From Klebsormidium nitens (lineage: Eukaryota; Plantae; Klebsormidiophyceae): a stretch of 33,375 nucleotides of DNA. The translations under genes were made by a program, and so were the position numbers. The stretch is from contig DF237730.1 in the NCBI GenBank assembly GCA_000708835.1, positions 1-33,375 of the forward strand. The letters are read 5' to 3'. A model generated the notes under the pieces. That model was not told the DNA's origin, searched no databases, and worked only from the letters and a program-made list of their open reading frames with translations. Below are positions 15,459 to 31,674 of this stretch, piece after piece; position 1 is the stretch's first letter; each line of letters begins with the position of its first letter.

Positions 15459-17901
15459 ATGGGTTTGGTGCAGCTTGATGGCGTCAAGCTTCCTGGTTTG
15501 ACGCTCCAAGAGACTCTTCTCCCTGGCTTCACCATTATTGAGGAGATTTACCGCACCTCTCAGTCCGTCCTGTTCCGTGCGCTGCGAGAGCGGGACACCT
15601 CACAGGTCGTGTTGAAAACAGTCCCCTCTCGGCTGGCGTCGCCGGAAAGCACCGCGCACCTGCGACGGGAGTACACAGTCGCAAGAGACCTGCAGGTATG
15701 TTGGGCCTGGCTGTGTCTTGCCCCTCCACTGGTGGCATACTTCTTAGAAGTTGACTTGTTGCAGAGTGTGCCACTTGCGGAGAGCTCGTTTCTTCTTCAT
15801 TTGACAGTCTGCTGCCACTTGTAAAGAGTCGAGACTTGCACAAGTTCCACATTTGATACTTTTGGGGGACCTGAGACTGAAACTTGAGTATGATAAGCCC
15901 GAATGTATCCTGAGGCCTTCCTTTGTCTTAAATAACAAAGCTGATACTGAAGCAGGCGTACAATGTTGGCCTGATCATGGCCATGCCAAGCGACAGTGGA
16001 TCGAGAATTAGGAGCCTGGTGGCATTACTTCCCCGTCGGGGCCACACTTTGTGGTCCTTGCCGACGTTAGCTGGCTCTAATAAAAAAAGTAACATCTTTC
16101 TCTGGCTGACAACCAATGGAGGGTGCACTGGAAATACCTGTCCGCCAGCAATCCTAAGGCTGTTGTGTTGATGTCCTTTGGCGCACAGGACTCCCCCTTC
16201 ATTGCTAAGCCCTTGGAGCTGATACAACATGGTGACACCGCTGCGCTGGTAAGTCGCAAAGAAGCACCCTGCAAGAGCTGTTCTTGGAGTATTGTTGAAC
16301 AAGCATGCTGGGTGCCGTCTCTCGCCTTCTGGATTGCTTTGCATCATAGCACTGAAGGGCACTGTGTGTCTTCGTTAAAATCTGCAAGGTCTTGGCGCTG
16401 AGGTGCAGGTGCTGGAAGACTTTGGCGCCACCTCGCTGCAAGCTTACGTGCGCGGCGGCAGGCTGGGGCTGCACGATGTGCTGCGGGTGGGCATTGCGGT
16501 GGCGTCCGCGCTGGACCATGTGCACGGGGGGGGGCTGCTCCACCTGGATGTGAGGCCGCCGCCAGGCTGATGCCCTGTGGACGCAACAGTCCAGTAATCG
16601 GACAAGGGGGCCCACTGTGGGTGGACGAATGTGTTGGATAAGCCCCGTTGATAGCTGCAGTGGACATCGACCCTTGAAATCGGTAGTCCTCTTTGCAGTA
16701 TTTCAATGATTACAGCTGTGGGCCTTGTCCAAAAAACGGGGCTTGTTCACCGAAAGCCACCCCCCACGGCTGCACATTGACCACTAGCGCACCGTCCTGA
16801 TGCGTCTGCTTTTCAACTTTAGAGTGCTGTCCGCGGTACTGCCCGTGTTGCAATGGGTAGTGGACACCGTGTCTTACCTACGATTTTGTCACAGTAGCAA
16901 GGGACCGGGCCGCCTGAAGCTGGACTTAGAATTGTGGCCCTCAGCGCACATGCTCCTCAGTGTTCACCGTGCAGGTGAAGCCCGCCAACGTGCTGGTATC
17001 TGCCAATCTGGCGGTCATCAAGCTGACCGACTTCTCCATCTCCAGCCTCCTTCCCGAGCACAGCCAGGCGCCTGTCAGCCCGGAGGCCCTGCGCGGAACC
17101 GCGGCCTACATCAGCCCCGAGGTAGGCAGCGCGCACTACCTGGTCACGATTCGCCCTCACAAGCACAAGGCGGGCAGGGGCTTAAGACGGAACATGTTCC
17201 TTCAGTTCGAATCAGCATCAAGCTGTGTGTCTCTCAAATGTGACTGTACTTCCTTAGAAAACTCTCTCGACGATCAAACCCAAGCGAGGGGGATCTGAGA
17301 AGGTATTTCATTCACTTTTCTTTTCTTCGTGGGCGTCGGCGAAGGCTTTTGAGATTGTCTGCTGACATTGGCTGACTGAGAACTGACAAGGATCGTCCTC
17401 CTGACCTTGTTTACCCATCTCAAAACTATACCTGTTGTTCGAGTAGCGTTGAGGATGTACACAAGTTTTCCCTGCCATTAAGGGGCACTTCTCGCATTAG
17501 GACGTGAGTCGAGACCCTCTCAAGCAGGTATAGAAATGCCCGTGTGAGTGGTGTTTTGCAGCAAACGGGGCGCATGAACCGCACCATCGACTCCCGCTCG
17601 GACCTGTACGCTCTTGGCGTGACCCTGTACGAGCTGGCGGTGGGCGCCCGCCCCTTCCACTCGGAGGACCTGCAGCACCTGCTGTACCAGCACCTGGCCG
17701 TCGTCCCCACCCCCCCCACGCGCCGCGACCCCGCCTTCCCGCCCGTCGTGTCGGACATAATCATGAAGCTGCTGCACAAGGACGCTGCGAACCGCTACCA
17801 GACGGCCGCGGGCCTGCGCAACGACCTGCAGGCGTGCCTGGACCAGCTCGTGCAGCACAACTGCATCACAGCCTTCCCGCTGGGCAGGGCCGACCAGCGA
17901 G
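15459..17901 (+). other. Ser/Thr protein kinase domain of the hybrid kinase (exons 1-5)
   Basis: VVLK (VAIK-type Lys), LRREY (alphaC Glu), VLEDFG hinge, HLD|VKPAN catalytic loop, [12 protein letters not shown]|[33 protein letters not shown]. Confidence 0.92.
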
Positions 17902-29900: not shown

Positions 29901-31674
29901 TCGTTCTGTGCAGCTGGACTGACTGGAACACCAAGGTGCGAGGCGCCAGGCACGCGGGCATGGATTTATCGCCCGGTGTGCAGCGTCGATACGTTCACTG
30001 GTGTACACAGTTCTTTGTTGTCCGGTGCAAGGCGTACCTCTGAACCTAGGCAATCGAAGACAGTGACGGAATGGCCAGACCCGAGATGCCGAAGTGCTGA
30101 TCGTACGGCTGTTTCCTGGCACTTGACTGATGCCTTTCTTGCCGTCTCCTGCTCTGCTCCTGCCGTCCCCCATGCTTTGTCCTGTGTTGCTGCAGGCGTC
30201 GCTCGGCCCGCTGCGCGCGGTGGTGAGCAAGCCGGTGAAGATGGGCCACCTCTGGGACGCTCTCACCAAGCTGCTGCGGGTCCCGCGCGGGGCGGCCCCC
30301 TCAGCTGTGCCGCCTATATCAGCCAGCGCGGACGAGGGGCCCCCATCGCCGATGGTAGCCAGCGCCGCCATGCGCAGCGCGCTCCGAATCTTGCTCACGG
30401 AGGTGCGCGCAGGCACACCATACTGAGCCACCACGAAGCTTACGATGGCCTCGTTCATCCGTTCAATCATTCAAATCTTTGGATGAGCAATGCCAGGGGG
30501 TTTGTGGCAGGGAGCACACTCCCAATTGTGCATCGCCAGGTGTCAGCCTTCGGCTGACTCTCCAGTTCATGCCTGTGTTTGCATTGCTGCTCCAGATGAA
30601 GGGCCCGACTGTCCACGTGCTTGCTTAAGCTGTTGGGCCCAGCAGGGGTTTGATTTGCAATTAACTGCATCCACCGCGATTCATTCCTGTCGTTTAGAGT
30701 GCTGCGAGCGGGCTGAATCAGCTTCCGTCATGATCGCCCATTGCAGGACAACCCTGTGAACCAGCGTGTAGCGCAAATGCTGCTGAAGCGGCTAGGGTAC
30801 CGTGCCGACTGCGTGGCGGATGGCATCGAGTGCATCCGCAGCCTGGAGCGGCGCCCCTATGACGTTGTTCTCATGGACCTCAGCGTGAGTTTCATATGCG
30901 GCGCTGCCAACAAATCACAGCATTTACATACAGTGCTAGCAGTCCCTTGCAAACCCCTTGAAGGCCTCTTGAGTTCCGATCTCGAAGCGAAGCCCCGTTT
31001 CATGGACTGCACTGCTGCCATGGCACGATGCCGCTCAGATGTTGCCCGCGCTTCCCCCGTCGCCTGACGCTGGGCCCTGGGCGGTGCAGATGCCGGTGAT
31101 GGACGGGCTGCAGGCGGCGCGCGTCATCTGCAGCCGGTGGGCCCCCGGTAAGCGGCCGTACCTGGTGGCCGTCACCGCCAACGCCATGGAGGGCGACCGC
31201 GACCGCTGCCTCGCCGCGGGGATGGACGACTACATCAGGTGGGGTCAACTGCCAAGCTAGCCAAAAGCGGGAATGTTTGATGTGCCGGAGCATGTCCTCC
31301 CTTTCATGAGAGCCCCCTCAAAGCCCGCGACTTTCATTTGCAGTTGGCGTCTTGCAAATGTTGAAGGTCCTCCTTGGCAGCTACGAGCATCGATCTTTGA
31401 CTCCTTGAAACCCTGCCTAAGCCGTAGATTGAAGCCTGATCAGCGGGCATAGCCATTATCCTGTCCTTACCCTGCATCTTGGTTTGGACATAGCCATTAT
31501 CCTGTCCTTACCCTGCATCTTGGTCTGGACAATTATTAAAAAGCTTACCTGTTCCGCGTCTGCAGTAAGCCTGTAAGGATCAACGATCTCCAGAAGGTGT
31601 TGGACGAGCAGGCGTTGAAGACCAACGAAAGATTAGATAGCCCTCAAAGCGTGCTTCAGTTGCCAGCTGATTAG
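15459..31674 (+). CDS. Multi-domain hybrid sensor kinase: Ser/Thr kinase - AAA_16/STAND-like ATPase - helical (TPR-like) region - GAF - HisKA - HATPase_c - degenerate REC - REC; 36 exons, about 2124 aa
   Basis: Exons 15459-15695, 16189-16248, 16409-16549, 16975-17121, 17562-17901, 18101-18247, 18612-18718, 18978-19156, 19376-19840, 20118-20292, 20526-20675, 21086-21281, 21596-21748, 21911-22029, 22375-22602, 22873-23124, 23501-23721, 23979-24137, 24385-24552, 24734-24896, 25301-25686, 26145-26393, 26589-26713, 26926-27056, 27191-27269, 27497-27636, 27844-28050, 28218-28329, 28478-28573, 28745-28779, 29168-29425, 29789-29935, 30196-30402, 30747-30884, 31090-31238, 31566-31674 (6375 nt; phases consistent; one GC-AG intron). 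Motifs listed in the domain features below. Confidence 0.93.
18101..21281 (+). other. AAA_16/STAND-like P-loop NTPase domain (exons 6-12)
   Basis: LGREHEL, Walker A GYSGVGKT (18214-18237), GKFDQY, Walker [13 protein letters not shown] (19431 onward), [33 protein letters not shown]|AAY. Confidence 0.9.
19157..19375 (+). other. GC-AG intron (intron 8 of the hybrid kinase)
   Basis: The conserved reading AAQNR-FSDTF needs a phase-2 donor after AAC AG at 19156. The sequence there is AG|GCAAGG with no nearby GT; the acceptor is TGCAG ending at 19375. Confidence 0.75.
25570..27056 (+). other. GAF domain (exons 21-24)
   Basis: [80 protein letters not shown]. Confidence 0.88.
27191..29240 (+). other. 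Histidine kinase core (HisKA + HATPase_c; exons 25-31)
   Basis: AKSLFL|[16 protein letters not shown] (phospho-His codon 27508-27510), [21 protein letters not shown]|[11 protein letters not shown] (N box), DSGIG (G1), [15 protein letters not shown]|GLGLAI (F/G2), [19 protein letters not shown]. Confidence 0.96.
30380..31610 (+). other. C-terminal canonical receiver domain (exons 33-36)
   Basis: LRILLTE|[16 protein letters not shown] (Asp codon 30876-30878), [20 protein letters not shown]|SKP. Confidence 0.95.
31448..31529. repeat. 41-bp tandem duplication (2 copies, 1 mismatch) in the last intron of the hybrid kinase
   Basis: catagccattatcctgtccttaccctgcatcttggt(t/c)tgga at 31448-31488 and 31489-31529. 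Confidence 0.95.

What the first reader, a model, noticed from the sequence alone, without database searches (positions are those of the whole stretch)
15459..31674. Ser/Thr kinase-ATPase-GAF hybrid histidine kinase fully intronised (35 introns) in an algal-type genome
Seen in sequence: one protein joins a Hanks-type kinase, a P-loop ATPase, a GAF domain, a complete His kinase and receivers, and I saw no obvious transmembrane segment. Established knowledge: this architecture is typical of cyanobacterial and other bacterial kinase/ATPase/His-kinase fusions and of fungal group X hybrid kinases (Candida Chk1, S. pombe Mak2/Mak3). It is not the architecture of the well-known land-plant CHASE, ethylene-receptor, AHK1 or phytochrome kinases. 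Inference: this is either an old bacterial acquisition or an ancestral family lost in land plants, and it could couple Ser/Thr phosphorylation to the His-Asp phosphorelay.
Basis: partly seen in the sequence, partly recalled or inferred. Interest (0 to 1): 0.72.

Follow-up and report, generated by a model that had tools for sequence, protein, structure and literature searches.

The report
Algal kinase-ATPase-GAF histidine kinase gene
This is a real, expressed, 36-exon algal gene for a large soluble sensor protein that joins a Ser/Thr kinase, an ATP switch, a GAF domain and a hybrid histidine kinase; the same protein type was already reported for the alga Klebsormidium nitens in 2018, so it is sound but ordinary.

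Summary
On the + strand, 15459-31674 carries one gene of 36 exons and 35 introns (34 GT-AG, one GC-AG). The reading frame is 2124 codons with no internal stop. Spliced RNA contigs from four studies confirm 12 introns and show no gene boundary between the ATPase-linked helical region and the GAF/histidine-kinase part. The protein aligns end to end (34.7% identity, 2108 columns) with a bacterial Pkinase-AAA_16-GAF-HisKA-HATPase_c-REC protein. Catalytic residues of both kinases, the P-loop and the last receiver are intact. A first, degenerate receiver-like domain lies before it, and there is no HPt domain and no convincing membrane segment. A related alga has a homologue with the same intron positions (dN/dS 0.15).

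Kabbara et al. 2018 already reported three "fungal group X" histidine kinases in Klebsormidium nitens and none in the land plants they sampled. This genome appears to be that alga and has three such genes; this scan found the other two before, on other DNA, and judged them not new. My trees place the protein on a long branch in an unresolved bacterial polytomy, not inside cyanobacteria, so its origin stays open. Interest is low.

The parts
15459..31674 (+). Whole coding region: 36 exons, 35 introns (134-493 nt, median 259), 6375 nt of coding sequence, 2124 aa. Exons: 15459-15695, 16189-16248, 16409-16549, 16975-17121, 17562-17901, 18101-18247, 18612-18718, 18978-19156, 19376-19840, 20118-20292, 20526-20675, 21086-21281, 21596-21748, 21911-22029, 22375-22602, 22873-23124, 23501-23721, 23979-24137, 24385-24552, 24734-24896, 25301-25686, 26145-26393, 26589-26713, 26926-27056, 27191-27269, 27497-27636, 27844-28050, 28218-28329, 28478-28573, 28745-28779, 29168-29425, 29789-29935, 30196-30402, 30747-30884, 31090-31238, 31566-31674.
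   Evidence: Least certain: the start of exon 25 (27191, or 27206 or 27227) and exon 32.
15459..17901 (+). Exons 1-5: Hanks-type Ser/Thr kinase domain (about aa 21-290). It has K53, E71, H-L-D146-x-K-x-x-N151, D165-F-S, and the family signature SPEQTGRMNR (193-202). The Gly-rich loop is degenerate, as in the whole family.
   Evidence: Pfam Pkinase on exons 4 and 5. Motif columns compared with 81 homologues. Collinear with the Pkinase domain of P0137, aa 7-255.
18101..19840 (+). Exons 6-9: AAA_16 / STAND-type P-loop NTPase. Walker A is GYSGVGK353T and Walker B is FLDDLQW (475-481). A GNPFF-containing helical part follows.
   Evidence: Pfam AAA_16 on 18073-18276 (E 1.1e-9) and 19347-19913 (E 3.4e-9). 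Exon 9 hits 23,595 representative proteins. Walker motif columns are 100% conserved.
19157..19375 (+). Intron 8, a GC-AG intron (AG|GCAAGG ... CAG|G).
   Evidence: The homologue in L001 has AG|GTTGGA at the same codon position. Only this junction gives ...AAQNRFSDTF, which matches the family consensus and the end of the P0137 match at 19157.
20118..25570 (+). Exons 10-21 (first part): about 750 aa of helical, TPR-like linker between the NTPase and GAF. No Pfam hit exon by exon.
   Evidence: The reading frame is continuous across RNA-confirmed exons 12-23. Pfam finds nothing. In the collinear homologues P0137 and P0100 this region gives sub-threshold PF25503 TPR_CHK1.
25574..27056 (+). Exons 21 (end) to 24: GAF domain (about aa 1361-1566) with an insert of about 60 aa rich in Pro, Ser and Gly.
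   Evidence: Weak Pfam GAF, GAF_2 and GAF_3 on 26874-27128 and 26928-27056. Collinear with the GAF domains of P0137 (1338-1480) and P0100 (1366-1497). Introns 21-23 are RNA-confirmed.
27191..27880 (+). Exons 25-27 (start): coiled-coil linker and HisKA. The phospho-accepting His1597 lies in SHEIRTPLN (codon 27508-27510).
   Evidence: Pfam HisKA, E 4.5e-17. Sequence read.
27880..29245 (+). Exons 27-31 (start): HATPase_c, with N box [10 protein letters not shown] (1710), G1 DSGIGI (1746), F box and G2 GGTGLGL (1775).
   Evidence: Pfam HATPase_c on 28369-28836 (E 6.8e-7) and 29057-29542. Junctions read. Motifs.
29294..30264 (+). Exons 31-33: degenerate receiver-like domain (about aa 1832-1947). 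Asp1886 and Lys1936 are kept, but the N-terminal acidic pair is replaced by His-Ser.
   Evidence: No hit to a REC HMM even at E 10 and no Pfam hit. A profile-profile comparison to the REC alignment gives probability 97.7%, E 1.5e-12, 112 columns.
30388..31601 (+). Exons 33 (end) to 36: canonical receiver, with E1993-D1994, the phospho-accepting D2037 (codon 30876-30878), T2068 and K2090. The protein ends 24 aa later, and there is no HPt domain.
Evidence: Pfam Response_reg on two exons. The 3' end was read.

Best explanation
This is one expressed nuclear gene of a streptophyte alga, very probably Klebsormidium nitens NIES-2285, and one of three paralogues. It encodes a soluble 2124-aa 'group X-type' hybrid histidine kinase with this domain order: Hanks-type Ser/Thr kinase, AAA_16/STAND NTPase, a helical TPR-like region of about 750 aa, GAF, HisKA, HATPase_c, a degenerate receiver-like domain and a canonical receiver.

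The likely mechanism is inferred from the domains and from work on relatives, not shown here. A cytoplasmic cue acts through the GAF domain and the nucleotide state of the STAND module. In fungal relatives that cue is oxidant or redox stress. The cue sets autophosphorylation on His1597. The phosphoryl group then passes within the protein to Asp2037, and on to a separate HPt protein and response regulators, because the protein has no HPt domain of its own. The N-terminal kinase domain keeps its catalytic Lys, Asp and Asn and its Mg-binding Asp, so it could add a Ser/Thr phosphorylation input or output. Whether it is active is unknown.
For: Gene structure and reading frame.

Expression and splicing: spliced contigs from four studies lie on 21083-27000 with no mismatch and 12 GT..AG joints. 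Single contigs of 6242 nt and 6137 nt bridge the whole linker. They run 2614 nt and 2509 nt further upstream, against 2148 nt of coding sequence upstream in my model. Another contig runs 2380 nt downstream of 26393, against 1933 nt of coding sequence.

Domains. End-to-end collinearity with bacterial full-architecture proteins. Catalytic motifs kept. Second receiver-like domain.

Purifying selection and conserved intron positions against the homologue in L001: dN/dS 0.15 over 1082 codons.

Literature: group X kinases in K. nitens (PMC6324907), the oxidant-stress role of fungal group X (PMC4965123), and cyanobacterial dual kinases (PMC2176072).
Against: - The RNA tables show sequence only for 21001-27000. 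That the long contigs contain the kinase exons is inferred from their length and from the exon 11-12 junction seen as a loose end.
- The runs are labelled 'RNA?' by guess, although the splicing shows they derive from RNA.
- Introns 24-35 have no RNA or comparative check.
- GAF is only weakly detected exon by exon.
- The organism's identity, and identity with one of KniteHK20/56/59, were not tested directly.
- No biochemical evidence exists for any step of the mechanism.
Confidence: 0.85

Rival explanations
1. There are two adjacent genes, a Ser/Thr kinase-ATPase gene and a GAF-hybrid histidine kinase gene, wrongly read as one.
For: Cyanobacteria also have kinase-only and kinase-GAF relatives without the histidine kinase part (PMC2176072). 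The RNA tables cover only 6 kb of the 16 kb.
Against: Spliced contigs run without a break from exon 11 to exon 24, across the only region where a boundary could lie. The frame stays open through 2124 codons. One alignment covers aa 21-2102 against single bacterial proteins. Contig lengths fit a full-length mRNA.
Confidence: 0.03
2. It is a bacterial contaminant, or a very recent and not yet domesticated transfer.
For: All the best full-length matches are bacterial.
Against: The gene has 35 spliceosomal introns, 12 of them seen spliced in RNA. Identity to any bacterial protein is only 33-37%. A related alga has a homologue with the same intron positions and dS of about 1.2.
Confidence: 0.01
3. 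The gene is real, but the N-terminal kinase-like domain is a pseudokinase that serves only as a scaffold or a nucleotide-sensing regulatory module. On this reading the protein is simply a histidine kinase with a large regulatory arm and does not couple Ser/Thr phosphorylation to the phosphorelay.
For: The Gly-rich loop is degenerate ([10 protein letters not shown]), the HRD motif reads HLD and DFG reads DFS. Kabbara et al. call the fungal domain 'serine/threonine kinase-related'. Exon-wise Pkinase scores lie just under Pfam's cut-off.
Against: The beta3 Lys, alphaC Glu, catalytic Asp, Asn and Mg-binding Asp are all kept. The degenerate Gly loop is shared by the whole bacterial family, whose full domains pass Pfam Pkinase at E 1e-32 to 1e-37.
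Confidence: 0.35
4. It is an expressed but decaying paralogue without function.
For: There are three paralogues in the genome. The first receiver is degenerate. A transposase-like gene lies next to it.
Against: The frame is intact and all catalytic motifs are kept. dN/dS against the L001 homologue is 0.15. Spliced contigs were found in all four runs laid, and 18 runs from six studies hold a third or more of the sampled words.
Confidence: 0.04

Closest known systems
Klebsormidium nitens KniteHK20, KniteHK56 and KniteHK59 ('fungal group X' histidine kinases in the green lineage; Kabbara et al. 2018, PMC6324907)
   Same: The architecture class is the same. The genome type also fits: it is intron-rich, has very many histidine kinase genes, and has three genes of this architecture according to this scan's notes. 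That matches the three published. The gene is most probably one of them.
   Different: Identity could not be checked, because no sequences or accession numbers are held in the paper's text and no supplement is held. The paper gives no exon structure, RNA evidence or residue-level analysis.
Fungal group X hybrid histidine kinases (Candida albicans Chk1; S. pombe Mak2 and Mak3, from my own knowledge)
   Same: The domain order is the same: Ser/Thr-kinase-related domain, NTPase, TPR-like region, GAF, HisKA, HATPase_c and receiver. Both are soluble and both need a separate HPt protein. Pfam names the linker of this family TPR_CHK1 (PF25503).
   Different: No fungal sequence was compared here. The window's exons give no PF25503 hit. 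Kabbara et al. find group X polyphyletic even within fungi, so shared architecture need not mean shared descent.
Cyanobacterial dual protein kinases, cbSTKIII (HstK/Alr2258, Pkn40/Pkn41; Zhang et al. 2007, PMC2176072)
   Same: [quoted passage not shown] Identity is 40-47% in the NTPase exon.
   Different: About 78% of the 81 bacterial relatives sampled, 36 of them cyanobacterial, lack the C-terminal receiver, and most have an HEINNPL-type H box instead of SHEIRTPLN. The window protein is not nested in the cyanobacterial clade.
Bacterial 'trifunctional serine/threonine-protein kinase/ATP-binding protein/hybrid sensor histidine kinase' (NCBI name), for example P0137 from MAG GCA_038209275.1
   Same: This is the best overall match: 34.7% identity over 2108 aligned columns, the same domain order, and a second receiver stretch.
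   Different: The bacterial genes have no introns, and many end in an HPt domain, which the window protein lacks.

Membership tests
Group X-type hybrid histidine kinase (architecture class of Kabbara et al. 2018 and Defosse et al. 2015) | N-terminal Ser/Thr-kinase-related domain | tested here: met
   Pfam Pkinase on exons 4 and 5; collinear with the Pkinase domain of P0137; catalytic residues kept.
Group X-type hybrid histidine kinase (architecture class of Kabbara et al. 2018 and Defosse et al. 2015) | GAF domain between the kinase-related domain and the histidine kinase core | tested here: met
   Weak exon-wise GAF hits (E 0.006-0.03), plus collinear alignment to the GAF domains of P0137 and P0100.
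Group X-type hybrid histidine kinase (architecture class of Kabbara et al. 2018 and Defosse et al. 2015) | HisKA + HATPase_c + C-terminal receiver in one polypeptide (hybrid kinase) | tested here: met
   H1597, the N, G1, F and G2 boxes, and D2037.
Group X-type hybrid histidine kinase (architecture class of Kabbara et al. 2018 and Defosse et al. 2015) | CHK1-like TPR linker (Pfam PF25503) | tested here: inconclusive
   No hit on single exons. The collinear homologues score 26.1 and 21.4 bits against a cut-off of 27. The joined protein was not scanned.
Group X-type hybrid histidine kinase (architecture class of Kabbara et al. 2018 and Defosse et al. 2015) | Phylogenetic grouping with fungal group X members | not tested
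   No labelled fungal sequences could be obtained with the tools. The word search with P0147 returned only bacterial names and one name from an insect assembly.
Published K. nitens group X kinases (KniteHK20/56/59) | Sequence identity with one of the three published proteins | not testable with these tools
   No supplement is held, and the searches returned no protein encoded by the window itself. The organism is inferred from earlier notes, from three paralogues, and from two organism labels holding identical RNA.
Cyanobacterial cbSTKIII / HstK dual kinases | Ser/Thr kinase + GAF + histidine kinase in one protein | tested here: met
   family definition in PMC2176072.
Cyanobacterial cbSTKIII / HstK dual kinases | Descent from within the cyanobacterial clade (as expected for a plastid-derived gene) | tested here: not met
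   FastTree: a starred 55-row clade dominated by cyanobacteria excludes the window protein. IQ-TREE with LG+C20: the protein lies in a basal polytomy and no starred set holds it.
STAND / AAA_16 P-loop NTPase | Walker A GxxGxGK[ST] and Walker B hhhhDD | tested here: met
   GYSGVGKT (347-354) and VIFLDDLQW.
Bacterial trifunctional kinase/ATP-binding/hybrid histidine kinase with HPt | C-terminal HPt domain | tested here: not met
   The protein ends 24 aa after the receiver. P0137 and P0100 have Hpt.

The most novel reading that the evidence does not exclude
The three Klebsormidium genes may be an independent, ancient acquisition of a bacterial hybrid-type 'trifunctional' sensor. On this reading they are not cyanobacterial or plastid-derived and do not share descent with fungal group X. 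They were later fully intronised, lost the HPt domain, and have been kept under purifying selection with an active Ser/Thr kinase. Klebsormidiophyceae would then own a true dual-kinase input to the plant-type His-Asp phosphorelay that the sampled land plants lack.
Probability: 0.25. Interest if true: 0.4.

Novelty: already known. Interest (0 to 1): 0.2.

Why it matters
It matters little beyond careful annotation. The report gives:
- an RNA-supported exon model, including a GC-AG intron;
- the residues to mutate (K53, D146, K353, H1597, D1886, D2037);
- the finding that the first receiver is degenerate;
- the finding that the gene is not nested among cyanobacterial homologues.

These points would help anyone testing whether streptophyte algae use a group X-type sensor for oxidant or other stress, and whether such proteins really link Ser/Thr and His-Asp signalling. 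The existence of this protein type in the green lineage has been published since 2018.

Tried and rejected
- My splice-site and codon-score gene finder first over-split exons (41 exons, micro-exons). With heavier intron penalties it skipped real small exons. I curated the final model by hand with homology and L001.
- My first model ended exon 8 at a weak GTTCCA donor (19189). L001 showed this was wrong.
- The Kabbara supplement search for the three KniteHK names or a peptide found no files held.
- The ESM Atlas look-up of exon 9 gave only generic AAA_16 clusters.
- The default MAFFT run in treekit timed out.
- The FastTree sister P0147 turned out to be a Rhodoferax-like betaproteobacterial protein, and the join vanished under the C20 model. 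I rejected it as long-branch attraction.
- The word search with P0147 returned bacterial names only, apart from one protein filed under the mayfly Ephemera danica, and did not surface the window's own protein or algal paralogues.
- Exon-wise Pfam found nothing in the linker, in kinase exons 1-3 or in the first receiver-like region.
- A REC HMM found only one receiver; the second needed hhalign.
- No structure prediction, complex prediction or fold search was run. The domains of interest span several exons and have no single reference.

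
Full report
**Observation**

The + strand between 15459 and 31674 holds many short stop-free pieces with kinase, P-loop, GAF, HisKA, HATPase_c and receiver motifs. Pfam scans of these pieces, given by reference, found the following:
- Pkinase on 16930-17139 and 17508-17942.
- AAA_16 on 18073-18276 and 19347-19913.
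- GAF, weakly, on 26874-27128.
- HisKA on 27466-28218 (E 4.5e-17).
- HATPase_c on 28369-28836 and 29057-29542.
- Response_reg on 30717-31064 and 30973-31257.

**RNA evidence**

Eighteen public runs from six studies, filed under two organism labels, hold 33-41% of the sampled words of 21000-27000. Two more runs of a seventh study hold 15%. This share is what spliced RNA of an intron-rich gene would give. I laid 21001-27000 (6000 letters, within the operators' limit) on four runs from four studies.
- All four show the same 12 GT..AG joints, with no mismatch.
- Single contigs of 6242 nt (X8) and 6137 nt (X10) cross the whole stretch.
- These contigs extend 2614 nt and 2509 nt upstream of 21083. 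My model has 2148 nt of coding sequence there, which leaves about 0.4 kb of 5' UTR.
- A third contig (X3, 3348 nt) extends 2380 nt beyond 26393, against 1933 nt of coding sequence.
- The loose end before 21083 reads the end of exon 11.
- The 12 RNA-defined exons join into an open frame of 807 codons.

So there is no gene boundary between the helical region that follows the NTPase and the GAF/histidine-kinase part. That the long contigs contain the kinase exons is inferred from their length, because the tool shows only the laid stretch.

**Gene model**

I wrote a small splice-site and codon-score dynamic program, trained on the RNA-confirmed part. It recovered the confirmed introns but over-split or under-split elsewhere. 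I curated the rest by reading junctions and by using tblastn match boundaries of full-length homologues.

A metagenome contig of a related alga (L001) carries a homologue that matches exon by exon at 50-94% identity for most exons. It has the same intron positions up to aa 1288. It showed that exon 8 ends at 19156 with a GC donor.

The final model has 36 exons and 35 introns (34 GT-AG, 1 GC-AG), 6375 nt of coding sequence and 2124 aa, running from ATG 15459 to TAG 31674. Introns 24-35 have no RNA or comparative check.

**The joined step**

The spliced protein was joined only inside the local sandbox, from /data/window.fa. It was not sent to any search, family, structure or literature tool. Those tools received exons by reference or protein ids returned by tools. 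A whole-protein Pfam/InterPro scan, a whole-protein database search and structure prediction were therefore left out.

**Architecture and residues**

Exon 9 alone hits 23,595 representative proteins. Most of the top 150 are 1,700-2,300 aa long and carry this stretch at about residue 440.

Local BLASTP aligns model aa 21-2102 with P0137 aa 4-2027 in one piece (34.7% identity, 1078 bits). P0137 is an intronless gene of a bacterial MAG with these Pfam domains:
- Pkinase
- AAA_16
- TPR_CHK1 (sub-threshold)
- GAF
- HisKA
- HATPase_c
- Response_reg (two stretches)
- Hpt

Against 81 homologues, numbered by the final model:
- The window protein keeps the beta3 Lys (K53), alphaC Glu, H-x-D146-x-K-x-x-N, D165 of DFG (here DFS) and the invariant SPEQTGRMNR.
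- It also keeps Walker A (K353), Walker B, H1597, and the N, G1, F and G2 boxes.
- The last receiver has E1993/D1994, D2037, T2068 and K2090.
- The Gly-rich loop is degenerate in the whole family.

A REC HMM finds only the last receiver. A profile-profile comparison aligns aa ~1832-1947 to the receiver profile at 97.7% probability. In that region the Asp (D1886) and Lys (K1936) are kept, but the acidic pair is lost. It is therefore a degenerate first receiver.

There is no HPt domain. The strongest hydrophobic window (1.84) lies in the helical linker and contains an Arg, so I see no convincing membrane segment.

**Is it a working gene?**

The frame is intact, the catalytic motifs are kept and the gene is expressed. 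dN/dS against the L001 homologue is 0.15 over 1082 codons, with dS about 1.2. A low-depth unspliced contig over intron 18 is ordinary pre-mRNA or intron retention.

**Relatives and origin**

A scan of one genome per bacterial species found at least 590 loci with the FLDDLQW signature. The best 80 are 35-47% identical in exon 9. They come mostly from cyanobacteria, but also from Myxococcota, Acidobacteriota, Pseudomonadota, Nitrospirota and others.

- In a FastTree of 82 full-length rows, the window protein lies outside a well-supported, cyanobacteria-dominated clade and joins another long branch, P0147.
- P0147 proved to be a Rhodoferax-like betaproteobacterial protein.
- Under LG+C20 that join disappears. 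The window protein (end branch 1.5) falls into a basal polytomy with no supported sister.

A plastid or cyanobacterial origin is thus not supported, and no donor can be named. I could not obtain labelled fungal, amoebozoan or other streptophyte sequences, so 'ancient transfer' and 'ancestral eukaryotic family' remain open.

**Comparison with what is known**

- Kabbara et al. 2018 (PMC6324907) surveyed eukaryotic histidine kinases. [quoted passage not shown] They reported none in the seven land plants or the two chlorophytes sampled.
- Fungal group X kinases are linked to oxidant adaptation and morphogenesis (PMC4965123).
- Cyanobacterial dual kinases (cbSTKIII: HstK, Pkn40/41) have been described since 2001-2007 (PMC2176072).
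- NCBI already names the bacterial hybrid form 'trifunctional serine/threonine-protein kinase/ATP-binding protein/hybrid sensor histidine kinase'.

**Earlier notes of this scan**

These notes are unchecked AI notes. They say this genome is K. nitens, and they describe two further genes of the same architecture on other pieces, with 33 and 32 exons. With this one that makes three, the published number. The same finding was therefore made before on other DNA of this genome and judged 'sound but not new'.

Two organism labels hold the identical spliced sequence. This would fit the renaming of strain NIES-2285 from K. flaccidum to K. nitens, which is my inference. I could not test the organism's identity or the match to a published KniteHK directly.

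**Verdict**

The most likely mechanism is a cytoplasmic GAF- and NTPase-gated hybrid histidine kinase feeding a separate HPt protein, with a possibly active Ser/Thr kinase arm. That mechanism is inferred, not shown. Novelty: already known. Interest is low.

Noticed in passing
window 19157-19375: Intron 8 uses a GC donor (AG|GCAAGG). The homologous intron in the related alga (L001, about 8800) starts with GT.
   Followed up: yes
window 31448-31531: A 41-bp unit is repeated twice in tandem (97% match) inside the last intron.
   Followed up: partly
window 24109-24412: A 304-nt unspliced contig covers intron 18 in runs X1 and X3 at depth 6-12, against 140-225 for the spliced contigs. This is low-level intron retention or pre-mRNA.
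   Followed up: no
window about 30300 (exon 33): The long RNA contigs of X8 and X10 both stop 1331 nt past 26393, in the Ala/Pro/Ser-rich spacer before the last receiver. It is an assembly break of unknown cause, possibly a polymorphism or a paralogue collapse. X10 also has a short 95-99% contig with loose ends at 26943 and 26980, probably from a paralogue.
   Followed up: no
The L001 homologue is instead flanked by a Plant_tran/DDE_Tnp_4 (Harbinger-type) transposase gene, so the two loci share no flanking genes.
   Followed up: no
window 15359-15390: A 9-bp unit (AGGTTCTGT) is repeated 3.6 times, about 70 nt upstream of the start codon, inside the presumed 5' UTR.
   Followed up: no
window 31700-33375: G+C falls from about 59% in the gene to 46% downstream of the stop codon. 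I did not examine what lies there.
   Followed up: no
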